A DNA stretch of 57,467 bases, filler included, from Platydemus manokwari (lineage: Eukaryota): the NCBI GenBank assembly GCA_037951405.1. It is 5 parts of 5 records of this genome, joined end to end, with 100 filler letters (N's around TTAATTAATTAA, not from the genome) between each part and the next. Parts side by side here need not be neighbours in the genome. Positions count along the whole stretch, not along the records: positions 1 to 10,748 come from JBBMOY011108553.1; 4 more parts are not named here. One strand, given 5' to 3'. The translations under genes and the position numbers were made by a program. Below, piece by piece: positions 1 through 10,748 of the stretch. Each line of letters opens with the position of its first letter. Position 1 is the stretch's first letter. The notes below the pieces were generated by a model, which saw only the letters and a list, made by a program, of their open reading frames with translations, made no database searches and was not told where the DNA came from.

Positions 1-49
1 CGTGGCTGACCAGAATAAACTGGAAACAGCATTAGCCGCAAAACTGTAA
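1..49 (+). CDS. tal: Transaldolase, C-terminal 15 codons (bacterial, partial)
   Basis: Frame from nt 2 reads VADQNKLETALAAKL* (TAA 47-49), resembling the TalB-type C-terminus (F-x-x-D-Q-x-K-L-E). tal upstream of hps is the known RuMP cluster order in Methylophilaceae. Confidence 0.75.
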   Translation, partial: VADQNKLETALAAKL

Positions 50-71
50 TATCAGTATGAGATGATGAGAG

Positions 72-102
72 AACGGGCAGGGACCTGCCCGTTTTTGATT
101 TT
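72..102 (+). terminator. Rho-independent terminator after tal
   Basis: 9-bp stem AACGGGCAG (72-80) / CTGCCCGTT (85-93), GGAC loop, followed by TTTGATTTT. Confidence 0.85.
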
Positions 103-130
103 ATATTCAGGCATAATTTGGCCTGTTACA

Positions 131-159
131 TTGACTTATTTTGGCTGCCGGCTTACTAT
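131..159 (+). promoter_or_regulatory. Sigma70 promoter for hps
   Basis: TTGACT (131-136), exactly 17 nt spacer, TACTAT (154-159). Lies between the terminator and hps. Confidence 0.8.
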
Positions 160-217
160 TAGCGACCAGCTTGAATTGGTAGTACGCTAGAAATAGCATT
201 TAGAAACTTAAATATTT

Positions 218-221
218 GGAG
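218..221 (+). promoter_or_regulatory. Shine-Dalgarno site of hps
   Basis: GGAG 6 nt upstream of ATG 228. Confidence 0.8.
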
Positions 222-227
222 AAAAAC

Positions 228-860
228 ATGGCATTAACTCAAATGGCATTAGACTCATTGGATTTTGACGCAACTATCGCTTTGGCAGAAAAAGTTGCTC
301 CGCACGTTGACATTCTGGAAATCGGTACACCATGCATCAAGCACAACGGTATCAAATTGCTGGAAACACTGCGCGCTAAATTCCCAAACAACAAAATCCT
401 GGTTGACTTGAAAACTATGGATGCTGGTGAGTACGAGTCTGAGCCATTCTACAAAGCTGGTGCTGACATCGCTGTTGTATTGGGCGTATCTGACATCGGT
501 ACAATCAAAGGCGTAATCAAAGCTGCAAACAAATACGGCAAAAAAGCTCAAGTTGACCTGATCAGCGTTGAAGACAAAGTTGCTAAAACTAAAGAAGTTG
601 TTGCTGCTGGTGCACACATCATCGGTATCCACACTGGTTTGGACCAACAAGCTGCTGGTCAAACTCCTTTCGCTGACTTGGCAGCGATCGCAGGTTTGAA
701 CCTGGGTGTTGACATCTCTGTTGCTGGTGGCGTTAAAGCTGCTACAGCTGCTCAAGTACGTGACGCTGGCGCGACTATCATCGTTGCTGGTGCTGCTATC
801 TACGGCGCTGCTGATCCAGCTGCTTCTGCTGCTGAAATCACTGCTATCGCTCACGGTTAA
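228..860 (+). CDS. hxlA: 3-hexulose-6-phosphate synthase (HPS/RmpA; RuMP formaldehyde fixation), 210 aa, Methylophilaceae-like
   Basis: MALTQMALDSLDFDATIALAEKVAPHVDILEIGTP...DLKTMDAG...HTGLDQQ...VAGG...AGAAIYGA are HPS/OMPDC-like barrel motifs. The MALTQMALDSLD N-terminus matches RmpA of obligate betaproteobacterial methylotrophs as I recall it. Intronless, with codon bias of a highly expressed bacterial gene. The true start is ATG 228 (behind the SD), not TTG 216. Confidence 0.96.
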   Translation: MALTQMALDSLDFDATIALAEKVAPHVDILEIGTPCIKHNGIKLLETLRAKFPNNKILVDLKTMDAGEYESEPFYKAGADIAVVLGVSDIGTIKGVIKAANKYGKKAQVDLISVEDKVAKTKEVVAAGAHIIGIHTGLDQQAAGQTPFADLAAIAGLNLGVDISVAGGVKAATAAQVRDAGATIIVAGAAIYGAADPAASAAEITAIAHG

Positions 861-2976
861 TTTATTAACTATCAATACGCGATGAGATCTCGCGCACTAA
901 CAGACAAATAAATTATCATCTGTTTCGGAGCATGAAAATTCTATAGCAGAATAAAATATATGACTCGATTAAAATAGGTTTTTTCTCTGTCTAATAAATT
1001 TATTCAGAGAGAATTTCTCTCACCAGTGAATAAATTCTATCGATAAAATAATAAATATTCACTGGCATTAAATTTAATCGCAGACAATATCTGCAAGTGA
1101 TTCACTACCTATATAAGGCAGTGATTTCAATCAACACTGCCATTATTTTTCACGGACATAATTTTTCGACACAATTAGACACAATGTTAGTGCCATTATT
1201 TTCACTGCCACGATTCCATAGACGACGTTACATCAAGTGAAGAAAAACCATCATTCAAATTTCTATTCGACGCACTGAAGAAGATCATCAGGTGCTGGAG
1301 ACTAATTTTCCTGTATATGCCCGGCATTTGCTGGAAGACCCAAAGTAAGACCGTACCTGTAAAATACTAATCTATATTATATACTGTATTTTGTATTTCA
1401 TACTATAGAGGTTGTTGCTCAAAAATCTTTGGTAATCGGTTTTAATCCAAGAGAAGGACGTATAAACCGCTATCATCTTGAAATTATTAGCAATCTTTAA
1501 AAAATCTTTTTGTATAGTATAATTTTAACATCAATTTTTAGTATATTTATTTTATGTTTGTTAATTAGTATTGGTGTCATATTTAATAAATATTTGTAGC
1601 ATTAAAGTCTTAGTTTTTCCTAATTATTGTAGAAGAAAATATAGTTAATAGTTTAAATAGGGTTAATTATTTTTGAGAATGATAATTAAGTAAATTAAAC
1701 GTATCACTACTGCAACATCTATAGTCATCATACAATAAGGCTGTGCTAGATGAAAGAACAACAATATAAGGTAGATTCCACCTATGGCCTTAATCAAGAA
1801 CTCATAGAGACTGATTAAGTCAGTAGTGGTATCAAATAGGATTAAGTTTAGTAACACAAATAATTCAATAAGGCCCGGACGTAACATTTAAATAGTTTTT
1901 GGTGTCTTGACTTTTCAGTTCATTTTTAATGTGTGGTTTTTAACACAGTTCATTTAATTTTAACATCGAGTAATTTAGGTATTTGGGTTTTAATATCGCT
2001 GGGTAAAACCCTATAATAAATAAATAATAAATTAAACATATTGAATTTTTTCCAAATTTTATTAAGTCTTCCTCCGAATAAAGAATATTGTTTTATCTAG
2101 AAATAGAAATCAAAGAATATAAATATATAATTAACTTAATCAAGTTGCTAGATATAGTAACCACATTAAAACAATAGCAATAATAAATACTAATACTAGT
2201 ATAAAACATAAAATAGAGCAAAAATTAATTAAATAAAACAATATAAATGCACACACAATTTTCATTTGAGCAGACATAAGATATGGCCGAATTTTTTTCT
2301 TACTCAATTATAATAAATTACAATTCACAAGACATTCAAAGAACTACCAGATACCTAAATCGAATTATAAAAGTCAAGAACAAATTGACCAGAGTGCTAT
2401 CACCCCTGAGCTCGTACAAACAAGCGAATAGAAAACTATAGCTTCTTTCGTTTCATAAATTTATCGGACCAGATCAGAGCAAACTCTAAAATATGTTTAA
2501 AAATATTGTTGACTGGTATTATAATGTTTCTATTGATGGATACCATACTATATATAATCATAATTTATTTGTTTTATATTCATATTTTACAATTATTAAT
2601 ATGAATTAAAAATTTTCCTCTGAGTCAACATTGTTAATGGGTACATGTTTCTATTCAATAATCAGCAAACATTCCAATTTGATCTTACAATTACTAAATG
2701 TTTCTGTTAATTGATTTTATAATCCAAAAAATAATAAATATATTTTGTTAAAGATAATTTTTGATAAACAAGTAATTTTTAATTGAAAAATGGAGGAACT
2801 TGTATATTATTTTTAGTAATTATAGAATATTTACTGATGATAATTGCACGAACCATATATCTAAACAAAACTTTGTTATATAAACATCAACAAAGCAGTG
2901 GTCTTTGCCATTTTAAGAATGTATTGAAGCTAGAACTACAACAAAGTATAAAAGATAAATTCTATTTTTGAAAATA

Positions 2977-3723
2977 CAGTCAACTCAGTTCAAAATGAAC
3001 ACTAGCGTTCCATATACGAACAGAGGTTGAATGAGAGATAACGTATTTAGTGGGAAAAAGAATAATTCGATTTAGGTTTCATAATAATTCTTTTCGATGA
3101 TATCATACATGCTTGGAAAGAAAAGAATTAAGCGAACCATTCGATGCTTTAAAATCATAATTTCCTAAGTATTTTTCCAATTCTAATGCTTTTTGTTGTA
3201 ATATATCACCACTCACACTGATATTTCTTGTTCTCTGGACCTGAAACCATTTATATAAAATGGCATCAACTTGATATTCACTACGTAAATATGTTTTTCG
3301 TTATTGTATGGTATTCAAAATTTGAATTCAAAATGGAGTCTTTAGATTTCATTAAATTGCTTATACAGCCCAATGAAAGATCATATTTTGATGAAAGAAA
3401 GCGTTGAGAACAACGCTTATCTTCATCGAGTAATTTTAACGATTTCTGTTTCTCTTCGATAATTAAATACTTTCTCTTTCGTTTGGAATTTGTGTTTTTC
3501 ATGTTCATAAAGGACAGTTAAAAATTACATATTTAAACAAAAATTGCATAATTTATTGATTTATTTTGAACTAATTTTTGTTCATTGTTTAAAATAAACA
3601 GTGTTCGTATTATGAAACATAATTTCCTATGAAAACCATCTGATTTCCAATAATTTTCGACTTAAATGTTCACATTAAACTATGTTCATATTAAAGAAGC
3701 TTCATATTGAACACGGTTGACAG
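2977..3723 (-). mobile_element. Tigger/pogo-like DNA transposon, internally deleted, keeping a frameshifted CENP-B-type HTH region
   Basis: TIRs CAGTCAACTCAGTTCAAAATGAA (2977-2999, preceded by TA) and 3701-3723, 18/23 identical. ORF 3508-3281 (KRKRKYLIIEEK...LSSKYDLSLGCISNLMK) continues after a frameshift as EYQVDAILYKWFQVQRTRNISVSGDILQQKALEL...FKASNG (HTH_Tnp_Tc5 signature). No DDE domain. Confidence 0.85.
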
Positions 3724-4644
3724 CATACAGTTAATTTAACAGTGTGTTGTAATGGTACTTCTGCCATTGAAATAAAAGTTACTTAGAACTACAGATACAC
3801 ATTGAAGAAATGGAGTAAGAGGAAATTATTTGAAAAATTGATAATTATTTGGGAGTTATCATTATTGTGATATCTGAAAAGCTCTATACTGTAATAACAA
3901 ATATCTTGATAGTCAAAAGTGCTCGTTATTTTCACTATGAACCAAGGTAAGATAAGAATTATGGTCAGCAAAGAACTGAACCAGATTAACAATAACAAAA
4001 ATAGCAATCATATTTTTATTCGTCAACTGTAATTTTATTTTTTTAAAACGATTTTGGATATCTTACTGTTAGTGAAACAATGCTTATTATATTTCTTATC
4101 ATTGCAGTTTGATAGGTTAATACTTGAAATTTTTATATGATTTATTAATTAAAATAGGAGATCAAAAATATTTCGAAATATTAATTTTTAATATTGTGTT
4201 AGAAACAGAGTTCAAATCTTCATTAAAATTATAATTTAATTAATCTATACAACCAAAGTTATTAATTACACCGATAGATGTTTTTTGATTTTAAAAACCA
4301 ATTATTATAAGTAATAAATGTTATCATTGTATAATTGAAAAATATTTATTTGATAACGATGGGTATTAACAAGGCTTTCCCGATGATTGGTGAGTAATAA
4401 AATAAATTAAATTTTTATTGTGAAAATGTTGCCCAATATCCCACAAGTAAACATGTGTTTCATAATTCCGTGTTCTCACGATCATTTATTTTCTAATTGC
4501 GTCCCTAATTGATCCGGATTAATAGTTGATCAATAGGAGACATTCAACTGAGTCACAGTAATAGAACAAGGAAACATTTCCGAAGCGAATATCAATCAAA
4601 ACATTCATAAATATGTTGTTTGCACGCAATGTGAATTTTTTTCC

Positions 4645-4680
4645 TATAAATTCCCAGTCACTGTTATTCAATCATCAGTC
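4645..4680 (+). promoter_or_regulatory. TATA box plus Inr core promoter of the CAP gene
   Basis: TATAAA 4645-4650 and TCAGTC 4675-4680 at canonical ~30-nt spacing, directly before ATG 4681. Confidence 0.55.
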
Positions 4681-5695
4681 ATGAAAATGTTGATTGTATT
4701 GATTGTTTTCAATCTCTCGATTCTATATCGATGTGAAGGTTCTCTGACGACAGCTCAACAGAAAGAACTTCTCAATATTCATAACAACTTAAGACGTCAA
4801 GTAGCCCTCGGAAAATTAAAAGGTCATCCAGCGGCTGCAGACATGTTGGAAATGGTTGATTTTTAATTTCATTTTTAAATATAACTTGACAAAATAAAAA
4901 TTGAATGAATTAAATTCCATAATATAGTTTAAAATAATTGACAAAATATTGATAATCAATATTTTGATTTGATTTGAATTTATGTATTTTAGAAATGGAG
5001 TAGCGAATCTGCTGCCATAGCTCAAAGAACAGCGGACCAATGTAAATTTAATCATGATAGTTATGCCAATCGTAAATATGGATCATTCAAATTTGTTGGA
5101 CAAAACATCGCTTCATTTTCCAGCAGCAATATATCCTCGTATTATAATTTTATATTTATAATTAAATTATTATAGTTATTTATATAATGATCACTTTAAT
5201 AATTATTTTATTTCATATAATGAAGTATTATAATAACGTTAGTATAAATGTAAACATTATTTATATATTATTAATATAATTTGAAAGATTTGATTTGATT
5301 TTTAATTAGTGGTGTACAAATGTGGTTTGATGAATTCAAAGATTTTAACTTAAATGATAATTCGTGTCGATCAGTTTGTGGTCATTATACTCAGGTATTA
5401 AAGTTATGATATCAATAATTTGTCAATCGACAACAATTTCAATAGGTTGTATGGGCTAAATCGAACGAACTCGGATGTGGAATGTCTAAATGTACACAAG
5501 ACGACTGGGATATGACATATTTATTCTGTAACTATGCTACTGCGTAAGAGATGGTTCAATGATATTTTATAAAATTATATTTAACGAAATATTTATTGTA
5601 GGGGTAACTTTAATTCAGAAAAACCATACCAATCTGGATCGGCATGTTCTAAATGTCCTGCAAAAACGAAATGTTCTAACGGACTTTGCAGATGA
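4681..5695 (+). CDS. Secreted CAP/SCP/TAPS (venom-allergen-like, PI16/GLIPR-like) protein, 198 aa, 5 exons
   Basis: Exons 4681-4854, 4993-5138, 5310-5394, 5446-5543, 5602-5695; all GT-AG and phase-consistent. Signal peptide, HNNLR, GQNI, WFDE, CGHYTQVVW, GCG, FCNYATAGNF, and a C-terminal Cys-rich hinge (CSKCP..CSNGLC). Confidence 0.93.
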
Positions 5696-7727
5696 TGTTA
5701 ATGAATAATGTTGATGAAAATATATAATGAATGAGCATTTGTTGAATATTGATTTTTATTTATGTTAATTGGAATATATAATTTATAATTTTAAGTAATA
5801 TTAATGATGATAATAATAATATATAAACATACAAACCTGTTATGTATAAGATCAATAACGATAATATCAGTATTTATAATTAATAATAATAAAATCAATA
5901 GCGATACTATTAATATTTATAAATGAATATTACAAGTGAATATTTATGTTAACATAAAGTACTGAATTGTCTTCGACTTTGCGATAACGCATGTCAAACC
6001 AAAATGAAATTCGATAATTATCAATATCATTTGAAAATATTATGATTCTATTAATATTCAAAGTAAAATTCAAAGAAATTATATAAGTTATATATAATAG
6101 TACAAATTGATTAGTATGAATTTAACACTCATTTAGGTGCAAGAGGTTGATGGAATCCTCTTTCTTAATAGCAGTGTCCAATACAGAAAGTTGTCGAGAA
6201 ATAGGGCTCTTTGTCATCATGAAATCCTTGTTTTGATATTTTCCATGCATAAATATCAATATAATCAGTACAGACCAACAGTTTTTATTTGATAAAGTGC
6301 AGCTTTATACTACGACAAATATACTGGAATTGACCAGTAATAACTGACATAAGTTGATAACAACAATCAGTACTATCCAAATCAAACCATCGAATAGAAG
6401 TTGAGCACAAGAAAACTCTAATATAACTAGTTACGACAACTCATTTGATATTCAACAACTGTATTTATGAGTTTGGAATTATATAGAAATCCAAACACAT
6501 TTGTTTTAAACTCATCGTCAATTGTATTATAGCCTATAGCATTATTAGTATCATTTAAATTATTCATATACTTCAATTTTCGTAATTATATCTATTTTTC
6601 TCCAATAAAGTGCCTGGTAAATAAGTCAAAGAAAAAATTTACATGGTATGGAAAGTGATTAAATAAATGTTCGTTAAATGAACTTAAAATCTGAACATAA
6701 AATTGAAAAATTAATACCAGGACTGATGCTGGAACAAATGAATATTTCCTGCCACTTTTTTTTTAACTTCCTAACTATTTTATAATATGTAGCAGTTGAA
6801 TGGATTTGAAATTCTTGATTAATCTCTGATATTTAGTTATTTGAGTTTACTAAATTGATTTTCTCCTTAACATATTGTTTGAGATTTTGTCGGATTTTCT
6901 TAAAATTCACAAATAAAGGCTAAATTATGAAATAATTTGAAAATATTTTCCTTTTTCCTTTTTTTACCTGTTTTTCAAAATATTTCAGAGTTAAAGATTG
7001 AGTTAAAAGCTAAATCATAAAATTTTTATTTATTTCTGCCTTAATTAAGGATCTCAGTAATTAAGATCTGTGCAAAACTTTGAGATTTTATTGTTTTTTG
7101 GAACAGAAAAACATTATTTTCCAATACCAGAGAATATTTTGTTGTTCAAAAATTTATAATTGTGAAATCGACGTAATAAAACGATAGAAATTATAACCAA
7201 ACAAATAACGAAAGGAAGTCAAACCTAAAATTTGAATTTGTTTCGGAAATTGATATTTCACTTCCCATTCACATTTGCTATTATGAATTTTTGATTTGTT
7301 CCATTATATTAGTGTTATGAATTGCATTAAAATCGTAAAGTGCAATCAACGAAATTTTCAAAACTTGTTTTACAATGGCTTCCTAAATTTCGAGAATGTA
7401 GATAGAAAATAAAAACGATTAATTATTTCAGCAGTTTTATAATTCTAATAATTTAGTATTAAAATGAAAGTACTTTTTAAAAGCAGAATAATAGATTTAG
7501 TGTGAGACAATAGTTAGGAGAGGTGGCAATACCTTTATACGATCGTTAGAAGTGCAGGTCAGTGACTGACCTACAAATCTAACAAACGCTCTGATGAATG
7601 TTCGACTTGTATATATATCCATGAGTGAGTCATTACTAATATCTATGAATATTTTCCTGCTCTCGTCATGCAATTTGAAATTGTAAATTGACCATAACTC
7701 CTTTGCATTTTAACTTTTATCTTAAAA

Positions 7728-7870
7728 ATGGAAGACAAAGCTCAGCTACTGAACAGAAATTTTAAAAAGTCTTCCTTATAACCGACGTAACATCATTTAT
7801 TGGGCTACAGAAAATCCACATCAAGAAATTGAGATAGATGTAACGGTTTGGGTTCCTATCTGTTGTAATA
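7728..7870 (+). mobile_element. Tc1/mariner (rosa/DD41D-like) transposase fragment
   Basis: 7780-7866 reads NRRNIIYWATENPH...VTVW, the N-x2-N-x2-YWA-x-ENP / V-x-VW signature of this family. Confidence 0.6.
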
Positions 7871-8882
7871 CGTTTTTTTCACAAGCGAGTCATACAACAC
7901 AATTTTGAGCGATTTGATATTTGCCTCATATTTAATATCTTTTGCCTATTTTTCTGATATGAATATTTAAATATGGATGTATAAATCTCAATATCAATTC
8001 ATTCATTCCTAAGTTTTCATAAGTTTAAAATATTGGCACCAATTTCAGCTGCACTTCGTAATTGAGTGACGTCGGCTTTAATGACACAGTAAATACAATA
8101 TTAATATTTATTTATTGAATTTTCGTTCCCACTGTTTTTGTTATAAATATATCGTGGATAATGAAAACCAGTTATAAACATTTTTTTTCATCACTATTAT
8201 CATCGATAGATGACAATACTCGGTAGCTTGTGTAATCATTCGAGTAGGCTTGAATTTATCTAATGTAAATATTTGACAATTAAATTTAAAAAAGAACTTC
8301 ATGAATAAAATCTATGTTTGAATTCAATCAAATCATAAAGCAATGAATTAGACGAATAAAATTGTTATATTGGTGAATTGAATGATCAACTTATCAAATA
8401 AAGTCGGTAAGAATGAAAATTTATTTCCGGTGAATTATTGAAAGGCATATCCAGTGAAAGAAACACGACTATTCCATTTCATAGTTTAAGTGACACACGG
8501 CACCAACTTAATTCACAATTGTTTAATTTAAACAAGAATCAAAGCTGTTGGATGCCGATAGTTTTGTTGTCAATGCTGTTTATCAAGTTTATTTGCATTC
8601 TGTATTTATCCGTTGAAAGTTTTATGTTGAATAATATTAATCACTAGAAAAATTGTGACTTTGATATTTATTAATTTTGAAATTCATTAAGTTTTTGAGG
8701 CACAATCAATTACGAAAAATATCCACTATTCATTCGATCATTAAGTTGATTTTTGATACTTTTCGCCATTCGTTAAAAAGTATTCGAAATAATAATAATA
8801 TCAATAACAACAACATCAATAATAATTATAGTAATAATAATAATAAAGATCAATGAATCAATGTTCAGATGTTGAAAATTAA

Positions 8883-10120
8883 ATGGCAGTTTGTGAATCA
8901 AAAGCTGGAAAGAGAATAGTGTAATAATGTTTTATTCTAAAATATGTTAAGTATAAAGAAAACTATCCAAATATCGCCAAAGAACCCTAAAAATCTTTTT
9001 CGAATCGAAAGCATATACACACAATCAATCAGCCAATCAAAGGTGAGATAAATTCCAAATATTCACGACGAATACATCACTAGACTTAAAGCAATATATC
9101 CAAAAACACGAAGACTCAATTAAAATCTTCTTAATAGGAAAATATAAATTACTGATAAAAATGAAACAATCCTCAACCTGTTGATATAAATTATTTTGTG
9201 CAAACAGTGTCAATTCAGTGTGACTTAATATTTGGAACGAGCACCATATTTTGTGATCTTGGTTATTATAAAAAAAGCCTACCTTGTCTGTTTACAACAA
9301 AATCAATCACTGATAATATTTTTTAAGTCATGTCACCGTTGGGTGAAGGTTCCCCCTTTATCTCATACACTGAATGATTAATTTCCTATTGGCTTCAAGT
9401 ACTAATTTATGTTTACTTCCCTAATTTAAAATGAAAGCCAGAATTAGTGAAAAAGTTTGTTCTTTGTTTATAAAATTTTATCACAAATATTGGCCAAGTA
9501 TTGAACTAGCTTTGTGATCATCAAATCTGCTTTTTAATTTCGTTTATACTTTAATATATGTGTGCCATTAACCATATGTGATTTTGTCATGTATTCTCCA
9601 TAGGTGTTCAATTTGTCGACTTATTTGAATAAATTATTTTATTATTTTTTCAAAAGATAAAAGATCATTTTCGAATTGATCAAACCATTGTAGTTATTTA
9701 CTTAGTTTATTCATCAATTGAAAAGCGAGATCATGTATAATGCAATTGATTTTGTGATTTTTCTTACTTATTCTTTCATTTTGTTTTCCTGTTTAATATA
9801 AAAATATCTTTCATGAGATTTTTATTTAATGTAGCTCTGTTCTGTCGAATGTATCAAAAGGTATGCACAGTGGTAGGCAATACAAATTATCTTAGGAGCA
9901 AACCACAGGCTTCTAAATCAACACTTATCGATGTATGTCAAACAGAAAAGAAAGAACTATCAGATGAGCCAATGGTAGTGAAGAATGAAGGAAAACCTCA
10001 AATTAAAATCTTGAATAAACAAAAAAACGATGCACAGGGTATTAATCGAACCACACACAAATTAGCACCAAATAACTAGTAAGTTCTTGGCAGTAACTGT
10101 CATATTTTTATAGTCGGTAA
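8883..10120 (+). CDS. Putative small Lys-rich protein of unknown function (~114 aa); tentative model
   Basis: Phase-consistent GT-AG chain 8883-8920, 8952-9042, 9835-9860, 9896-10078, 10114-10120, with good donors GTGAGA, GTATGC and GTAAGT. It needs 31-35 nt introns and no homology is recognised. Confidence 0.3.
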
Positions 10121-10550
10121 CTTTCTGCATATATTCGTCTTTCGGGTGTAAGCTCACTATGATTCGATTTAGTGAATTCGAATTGCGGAAGAATTTTGTG
10201 ATTACAATTGGTTGAGTGTGATCATTTTGAGTTATTATTTTTGGTCAAAATACAACTTTGCATGTTTTAATTAATTAATAATCTATCAGTGTCTTTGTTT
10301 CGATTTATTTTTTATAATGAATTATTACTGTCACGACAGACAAAGGTAATAATTCCCTGTGTAAACATTAAACAAATATTATTAATAAATATCACATTCT
10401 TCCACATATTTATAGATCAATCCATAACATTACATATTTTTTCGAAATATTTCTGATTTGGAATATCGTAATTAGAATCTTACTGTTTATTTATTCGGAA
10501 AGGCCTAAATAACGAGAAATGAATTACAATTGTGCTAATATTGTATTTAA

Positions 10551-10748
10551 GGCTTAAGTTAAGAAAAAGAGTCCTTTGACCTACTTTCATTATAATGAAT
10601 TTTCGAGCATGAGATAAATTTATAACCTAATTTTATATATCACTATGTTTAATTTATTCGTATAATTCAATTAATATTTCAATTTTTAAGATGTTTAATA
10701 GTGACTTAACATAGTTTTAAAGCCTAGTTCCCACTCCATTCACAACAT
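10551..10748 (+). mobile_element. Left end of a second copy of the Merlin-like MITE, cut by the contig end
   Basis: Begins GGCTTAAGTTAAGAAAAAGAG and aligns over ~200 nt with 43395-43595. Confidence 0.8.

What the first reader, a model, noticed from the sequence alone, without database searches (positions are those of the whole stretch)
1..1000. Intact methylotroph formaldehyde-fixation cassette (tal-terminator-promoter-hps) fused without a linker to animal DNA
Seen: nt 1-860 are undecayed bacterial DNA with a terminator, TTGACT-N17-TACTAT, an SD and an intronless HPS. Within ~15-100 nt of the stop the sequence becomes AT-rich, and the same contig carries a Tigger element and a 5-exon CAP gene. 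Every other join in the window has the N-linker; this one does not. Known: HPS works with PHI (hxlB/rmpB), which normally lies nearby and is absent downstream here. Inference: most likely a chimeric contig from a freshwater Methylophilaceae contaminant or associate, because there is no amelioration and the bacterial signals are intact. A recent bacterial insertion into an animal genome cannot be excluded and would be notable.
Basis: partly seen in the sequence, partly recalled or inferred. Interest (0 to 1): 0.7.

Follow-up and report, generated by a model that had tools for sequence, protein, structure and literature searches.

The report
Methylophilus DNA misjoined to animal contig
The first 877 bases of this contig are ordinary DNA of a free-living Methylophilus bacterium, joined at the very end of an AT-rich animal-type contig beside a high-copy repeat; this is most likely an assembly or library chimera from a contaminant, not a gene transfer.

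Summary
Window 1-877 is Methylophilus DNA: the last 15 codons of transaldolase, its terminator, a promoter-like site, a Shine-Dalgarno sequence and an intact 210-aa 3-hexulose-6-phosphate synthase (hps).

- **Identity:** it is 98.97% identical, without gaps, to a sequenced genome. All six coding differences are synonymous. The exact protein is encoded on at least four bacterial contigs.
- **Breakpoint:** homology stops at 877/878, 17 nt after the hps stop. That point lies inside the first arm of a native hairpin, before the native terminator and the partner gene phi.
- **Right-hand side:** 878-10748 is 27% G+C eukaryotic DNA. About 900-1943 is a repeat at very high copy number. Further right are a Tigger fragment and a five-exon CAP gene.
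- **Position:** the bacterial part sits at the end of the piece, so host DNA flanks it on one side only.
- **Reads:** no public contig bridges 877. In two runs the bacterial contigs run on past 877 into the native Methylophilus sequence. In the host-like run the bacterial part is patchy (460-837 only), at depth 4.8 against 11.3 for unique host DNA.

Verdict: a chimeric contig end from a contaminant or associated bacterium (about 85%).

The parts
2..49 (+). 3' end of a bacterial transaldolase gene (last 15 codons plus stop), cut by the edge of the piece
   Evidence: It translates to VADQNKLETALAAKL*. It aligns to the end of the 317-aa TAL_FSA gene of L081, which scores 492 bits on TIGR00874.
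69..106 (+). Rho-independent terminator of tal (12-pair stem, then a T-run)
   Evidence: Terminator scan. The sequence is conserved in Methylophilus genomes.
131..159 (+). Sigma-70-like promoter match TTGACT-N17-TACTAT upstream of hps
   Evidence: 9 of 12 positions match. One such site is not more than chance gives, so this is a consensus match only.
218..221 (+). Shine-Dalgarno GGAG, 6 nt before the ATG
   Evidence: Read directly from the sequence.
228..860 (+). Intact hps (hxlA/rmpA), 3-hexulose-6-phosphate synthase, 210 aa
   Evidence: TIGR03128 233 bits against a cut-off of 200, and PF00215. The exact protein is encoded on at least 4 bacterial contigs.
861..877 (+). Last 17 nt of bacterial DNA; it ends inside the 5' arm of a native 8-bp hairpin
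   Evidence: Identical to L081 up to 877. The native continuation AGTAATTATTGATCAGCG..., the terminator and phi are missing.
877..878 (.). Junction between bacterial DNA and host-type DNA; no linker and no N
   Evidence: Alignment A1 and blastn end points. Loose ends at 877 in runs X2 and X21 continue as native Methylophilus sequence.
878..900 (.). About 10-20 nt that cannot be assigned with certainty (CGCGATGAGATCTCGCGCAC...); probably the outer part of the host repeat
   Evidence: No bacterial, plasmid or metagenome match. Summed X1 depth in bin 801-900 is already 134, so repeat copies reach into this stretch (inference).
900..1943 (.). High-copy dispersed repeat of the host, with 16-nt CACTGSCATTAWWTTT sub-repeats at 1060, 1135, 1151 and 1188
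   Evidence: Summed contig depth is 2,600-130,000 in X1 against 11.3 for the flanking unique DNA. Fifty loose ends lie at 1943, and the unique contig stops at 1914. Sub-repeats.
1944..10748 (.). Unique AT-rich (27% G+C) eukaryotic DNA carrying a Tigger/pogo fragment (3106-3508, minus strand) and a five-exon CAP gene (4681-5695, plus strand)
   Evidence: An X1 contig covers 1914-3000 with 0 differences. HTH_Tnp_Tc5 scores 24.4 bits and there are CAP exon matches. All introns are GT..AG.

Best explanation
The contig is a chimera. Its first 877 bases come from a Methylophilus cell that was in the sample, the culture water or the reagents. They are a random fragment of the tal-hps-phi ribulose-monophosphate operon. 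This fragment became joined to host DNA within or beside a high-copy host repeat. The join most likely arose either as a chimeric library molecule or long read (two unrelated fragments ligated, or a template switch at the bacterial hairpin) or as a wrong extension of a contig end by the assembler. The hps gene is a normal bacterial gene that works with phi in the bacterium and has no function in the animal. Shown: the bacterial identity, the exact breakpoint, the missing partner gene and terminator, the terminal position, the repeat on the host side, and the lack of any bridging contig. Inferred: the way the join was made.
For: 1. Window 1-877 is 98.97% identical, without gaps, to a Methylophilus-type genome (L081). 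It is 98.4% and 96.9% identical to two other Methylophilus genomes.
2. All 6 coding differences from L081 are synonymous. The 210-aa protein is identical to one encoded on at least 4 bacterial contigs. The divergence therefore arose under bacterial purifying selection, not as decay in an animal genome.
3. Homology stops at 877, inside the 5' arm of a native hairpin. The native terminator and phi (TIGR03127, 177 bits) follow in every relative and are absent here, so the cut is arbitrary.
4. The bacterial part begins at base 1 of the piece, so host DNA lies on one side only.
5. The host side of the join is a repeat at very high copy number. Assemblies are least reliable in such places.
6. No contig of any laid run bridges 877. 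In X2 and X21 the bacterial contigs run on past 877 into native Methylophilus sequence.
7. In the host-like run X1 (0 differences over 1914-3000, depth 11.3) the bacterial part is seen only at 460-837, at depth 4.8. Nothing lies on 1-459 or 838-877.
8. No public run holds more than 0.42 of the words of 1-2000. The bacterial part alone occurs in runs of 16 studies, including soil, plant, gut and moss metagenomes.
9. Methylophilus is on the published list of genera found in sequenced negative controls (PMC4228153).
Against: - The X1 bacterial contig has 0 differences from the window, and its depth (4.8) is close to half the host depth (11.3). A hemizygous insertion would look the same.
- Short-read contigs could not bridge a junction that abuts a high-copy repeat in any case, so the lack of a bridging contig is weak evidence.
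- The tool warns that holes in contig cover prove nothing.
- X1 may be the very sample the assembly was built from, so it is not independent.
- No adapter or linker was recognised at the junction. Nothing marks it as a library artefact either.
Confidence: 0.85

Rival explanations
1. This is a real and very recent insertion of a Methylophilus fragment into the host genome, next to or inside a copy of a high-copy transposon-like repeat. It may be hemizygous or present in one lineage only. The contig simply ends inside the insert.
For: The X1 contig over 460-837 is identical to the window, at about 0.42 of the depth of neighbouring unique host DNA. The join has no linker and no recognisable adapter. 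Repeat-rich regions are usual landing places for foreign DNA (general knowledge).
Against: - There is no host DNA to the left of the bacterial part.
- Identity to free-living strains is about 99%, and only synonymous coding changes are seen.
- There is no amelioration and no intron.
- The operon is cut at an arbitrary point.
- Cover in X1 is patchy, with nothing on 1-459.
- No run holds both sides as one contig.
- The same bacterial DNA continues into phi in other runs.
Confidence: 0.08
2. The join was made by the assembler or a later polishing or gap-closing step, through a short chance overlap between an AT-rich bacterial intergenic end and a copy of the host repeat. No chimeric molecule was involved.
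For: The last bacterial bases (ATTTATTAACTATCAATA) are AT-rich like the host DNA. The host side is a repeat with thousands of copies. The bacterial part is terminal.
Against: No shared stretch is visible at the junction. The native bacterial continuation and the window differ from the first base after 877. There is therefore no overlap that a graph or overlap assembler could have used. This is a sub-variant of the artefact reading, not a different biology.
Confidence: 0.05

Closest known systems
tal-hps-phi ribulose monophosphate (RuMP) gene cluster of Methylophilus (Methylophilaceae)
   Same: The order tal, terminator, intergenic region, hps is the same. DNA identity is 96-99%. The HPS protein is identical to that of at least 4 bacterial contigs.
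   Different: The window holds only the last 15 codons of tal. It lacks the hps terminator and phi because the sequence switches to host DNA at 877.
Bacterial contaminant sequence and chimeric contigs in eukaryote genome assemblies (for example the disputed tardigrade HGT claims; own knowledge)
   Same: Undecayed bacterial DNA with bacterial signals lies at a contig end. It is near-identical to free-living bacteria and has no independent support for the junction.
   Different: The chimera itself was not shown directly here, because raw reads of the source assembly were not available.
Bona fide bacteria-to-animal gene transfers (for example in bdelloid rotifers or from Wolbachia into insects; own knowledge)
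   Same: Bacterial coding DNA lies beside transposon-like repeats in an animal-type contig.
   Different: Accepted cases are flanked by host DNA on both sides and are supported by spanning reads or PCR. Most show some divergence, introns or host expression signals. None of this is seen here.

Membership tests
3-hexulose-6-phosphate synthase (HxlA/RmpA, TIGR03128; OMPdecase/HUMPS fold PF00215) | Full-length match above the curated cut-off | tested here: met
   TIGR03128 scores 233.4 bits against a cut-off of 200, over residues 5-206 of 210. PF00215 scores 131 bits.
3-hexulose-6-phosphate synthase (HxlA/RmpA, TIGR03128; OMPdecase/HUMPS fold PF00215) | Partner gene phi (hxlB/rmpB) adjacent | tested here: not met
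   phi is absent in the window, where the sequence switches to host DNA at 877. It is present about 105 nt downstream in all four exact-protein contigs (TIGR03127, 177 bits against a cut-off of 160). Its absence comes from truncation, not from a different gene family.
Genuine bacteria-to-animal horizontal transfer | Foreign segment flanked by host DNA on both sides in one contig | tested here: not met
   The bacterial DNA starts at base 1 of the piece, so host DNA lies on the right only.
Genuine bacteria-to-animal horizontal transfer | Reads or contigs that span the junction, at host depth | tested here: inconclusive
   No contig bridges 877 in 4 runs. In X1 the bacterial contig covers 460-837 at depth 4.8 against host depth 11.3. 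Only contigs, not raw reads, were available, and the junction abuts a high-copy repeat.
Genuine bacteria-to-animal horizontal transfer | Signs of residence in the host (amelioration, decay, introns, host signals) | tested here: not met
   The segment is 98.97% identical to a bacterial genome, with only synonymous coding changes. Its G+C is 45% against 27% for the host DNA. It keeps bacterial signals, an intact ORF and has no intron.
Genuine bacteria-to-animal horizontal transfer | Presence in independent individuals or populations | not testable with these tools
   Only one host-like run (X1) was found, and it may be the source sample.
Contaminant-derived chimeric contig | Near-identity to free-living bacteria whose own contigs continue differently past the breakpoint | tested here: met
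   Contigs of X2 and X21, and genomes L081-L083 and L001-L004, continue past 877 into the hairpin, terminator and phi.
Contaminant-derived chimeric contig | Rest of the contaminant genome present in the same reads or assembly at similar low depth | not tested

The most novel reading that the evidence does not exclude
A Methylophilus fragment carrying an intact hps gene with its bacterial promoter has very recently integrated, perhaps hemizygously, beside a high-copy transposon-like repeat in the genome of an AT-rich invertebrate. This would be a bacterial-to-animal transfer caught before any decay.
Probability: 0.08. Interest if true: 0.7.

Novelty: not a real feature. Interest (0 to 1): 0.1.

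Why it matters
If the join were real, it would be a freshly caught bacteria-to-animal transfer of a formaldehyde-fixing gene, which would be notable. As it stands, its main value is quality control. The first 877 bases of this contig should be trimmed or flagged as Methylophilus contamination. Any HGT screen of this assembly should treat terminal bacterial segments next to repeats as suspect. The bacterial genes themselves are ordinary and well known.

Tried and rejected
- **Bridging contig in public runs:** none was found.
- **Metagenome scans:** two exact-pattern scans, for the junction-side letters 884-903 and for the repeat at 912-933, gave 0 hits. Whether 878-900 belongs to the host repeat could not be settled from other copies.
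- **Plasmid or vector search:** blastn of 861-1400 found no match, so there is no sign of vector origin.
- **Adapters:** I compared the junction letters with common sequencing adapters from memory. Nothing convincing came up, and this is not a test.
- **Exact-protein look-ups:** two host-side ORFs (9813-10076 plus strand, 1666-1887 minus strand) were looked up to find the source species or other repeat copies. Neither is on record. The host species was therefore not identified.
- **RNA genes:** the Rfam and tRNA scans of the whole piece found nothing.
- **Other repeat copies:** no second copy of the 900-1943 repeat lies in the window.
- **Joined CAP protein:** it was not searched as a spliced model.

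Full report
**What is in the sequence.** The piece (1-10748) has two parts with very different composition. Positions 1-877 have 45% G+C and 878-10748 have 27%.

The left part holds these bacterial features:
- In frame 2, the last 15 codons and the stop of a gene (2-49).
- A 12-pair hairpin with a T-run (69-106).
- One sigma-70-like match, TTGACT-N17-TACTAT (131-159). One such site is no more than chance gives in this region.
- GGAG at 218-221.
- An uninterrupted 210-codon ORF from the ATG at 228 to the stop at 858-860.

The ORF is a 3-hexulose-6-phosphate synthase. It scores 233 bits on TIGR03128 (cut-off 200) and 131 bits on PF00215.

**Whose DNA it is.** A scan of one genome per bacterial species returned 80 loci, and the best ones are all Methylophilus.
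- By blastn the whole of 1-877 aligns at 98.4% to a Methylophilus MAG (L002), 96.9% to Methylophilus sp. Leaf416 (L001) and 91-96% to other Methylophilus. More distant Methylophilaceae align only over the coding part. Nothing beyond 883 matches any locus.
- An exact-sequence look-up found the identical 210-aa protein on at least four bacterial contigs. All four have transaldolase upstream. The three contigs that extend past hps have a SIS-domain gene downstream; the fourth (L084) ends 35 nt after hps.
- The best of these, L081 (GCA_042676265.1), is 98.97% identical over 1-877 with no gaps.
- Its neighbours are a transaldolase (TIGR00874, 492 bits) and a 6-phospho-3-hexuloisomerase (TIGR03127, 177 bits against a cut-off of 160).
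- Of the nine differences from L081, six lie in coding DNA (five in hps, one in tal) and all six are synonymous.

That pattern is expected for two bacterial strains under purifying selection. It is not expected for a gene drifting in an animal genome.

**The breakpoint.** The alignment with six Methylophilus loci, and the direct comparison with L081-L084, put the end of homology at 877/878. The window reads ...TTAATTTATTAACTATCAATA and then CGCGATGAGATCTCGCGCAC.... The bacteria read ...TATCAATA and then AGTAATTATTGATCAGCG....

In the bacteria this is an 8-bp hairpin (ATCAATAA / TTATTGAT). A strong terminator hairpin follows it (-16.6 kcal/mol, z = -7.3), and then phi starts about 105 nt after the hps stop.

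So the window breaks inside the first arm of the small hairpin. It lacks the hps terminator and the partner gene. The "cassette" is therefore a random fragment of the tal-hps-phi cluster. It is cut on the left by the edge of the piece and on the right at an arbitrary intergenic base.

**The other side.** From 878 on there is no bacterial, plasmid or metagenome match.
- A fragment of a Tigger/pogo transposase lies on the minus strand at 3106-3508 (HTH_Tnp_Tc5, 24.4 bits against a cut-off of 22.2).
- A CAP-family gene reads cleanly as five exons: 4681-4854, 4993-5138, 5310-5394, 5446-5543 and 5602-5695. Every intron is GT..AG, and exons 2 and 4 give CAP matches.

This is eukaryotic, animal-type DNA. 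The species could not be named with the tools at hand.

**Public reads.** No public run holds more than 0.42 of the sampled words of 1-2000. Twenty runs from 16 studies hold part of it, among them soil, plant, gut and moss metagenomes. Four runs were laid on 1-3000, all as contigs.
- **X1** is host-like. One contig covers 1914-3000 with no difference at depth 11.3. The stretch from about 900 to 1943 draws thousands of short contigs with summed depth of 2,600 to 130,000, so it is a dispersed repeat of very high copy number. Fifty loose ends at 1943 mark its right edge.
- **Bacterial DNA in X1.** The only bacterial contig covers 460-837, with no difference, at depth 4.8. Nothing lies on 1-459 or 838-877.
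- **X2 and X21.** The bacterial contigs end their match at 877 and run on as AGTAATTATTGATCAGCGATAATAAAACCC and AGCAATTATTGATC. Both are the native Methylophilus continuation.
- **Bridging.** No contig in any run bridges 877.

The summed X1 depth in bin 801-900 is 134. This implies that copies of the host repeat reach to within roughly ten bases of the junction. The GC-rich letters at 878-900 are therefore probably the outer part of the repeat, not a synthetic linker. This is an inference, not a measurement.

**Reading.** Several points speak for a chimeric contig end built from contaminant or associated Methylophilus DNA:
- The bacterial part is terminal.
- It is about 99% identical to free-living strains, with synonymous-only coding changes.
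- The operon is cut at an arbitrary point.
- A high-copy repeat lies on the host side.
- The junction has no support in public data.
- Methylophilus is on the published list of genera found in sequenced negative controls (PMC4228153).

The join has no shared bases on its two sides, so an overlap error of the assembler is less likely. A chimeric molecule or read is more likely, formed by ligation of two fragments or by a template switch at the hairpin. This last step is inferred and was not shown.

**What keeps the rival alive.** The X1 bacterial contig is identical to the window, and its depth is near half that of unique host DNA. A hemizygous insertion would give the same result. Short-read contigs could not cross into a repeat of this copy number in any case, and the tool itself warns that holes in contig cover prove nothing. 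X1 may also be the sample the assembly came from. I therefore put a real, very recent insertion at about 8% and an assembler-made join without a chimeric molecule at about 5%.

**Comparison with what is known.** The bacterial genes are ordinary members of the RuMP cluster of Methylophilus. The overall picture matches well-known cases of bacterial contamination in eukaryote assemblies. It fails the tested criteria for accepted bacteria-to-animal transfers: flanking by host DNA on both sides, and signs of residence in the host. A literature search for hexulose-phosphate synthase transferred into metazoans found only symbiont papers.

**Verdict.** The fusion is most likely not a real feature of the animal genome. 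Interest is low unless spanning reads or PCR show otherwise.

**Left out as instructed.** The joined CAP protein was not searched as one spliced sequence. Its exons were scanned one by one.

Noticed in passing
window 900-1943: This is a dispersed repeat of very high copy number in the host-like run X1. Summed contig depth is 2,600-130,000 against 11.3 for unique DNA, with a peak at 1001-1100. It has four 16-nt CACTGSCATTAWWTTT sub-repeats (1060, 1135, 1151, 1188) that recall subterminal repeats of a DNA transposon. No clear terminal inverted repeats were found, so its class is undetermined.
   Followed up: partly
window 3106-3508 (minus strand): A short fragment of a Tigger/pogo transposase lies here, carrying the N-terminal DNA-binding part only. 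HTH_Tnp_Tc5 scores 24.4 bits. The rest of the element is missing, so it is a dead remnant.
   Followed up: partly
window 4681-5695 (plus strand): A CAP/CRISP-family secreted protein gene with a signal-peptide-like start lies here. It has five exons (4681-4854, 4993-5138, 5310-5394, 5446-5543, 5602-5695) and four GT..AG introns of 51-171 nt. It appears intact.
   Followed up: partly
L081 3644-3705 and the same place in L001-L004: In Methylophilus the hps-phi spacer carries a conserved 8-bp hairpin followed by a strong terminator-like hairpin between two genes of one pathway. This suggests attenuated or uncoupled expression of phi relative to hps.
   Followed up: no
L084 (Logan contig SRR12349680_5778, 12,617 nt): Another public assembly's contig also ends about 35 nt after the hps stop, within the same hairpin and terminator region. 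The spot seems prone to contig breaks.
   Followed up: no
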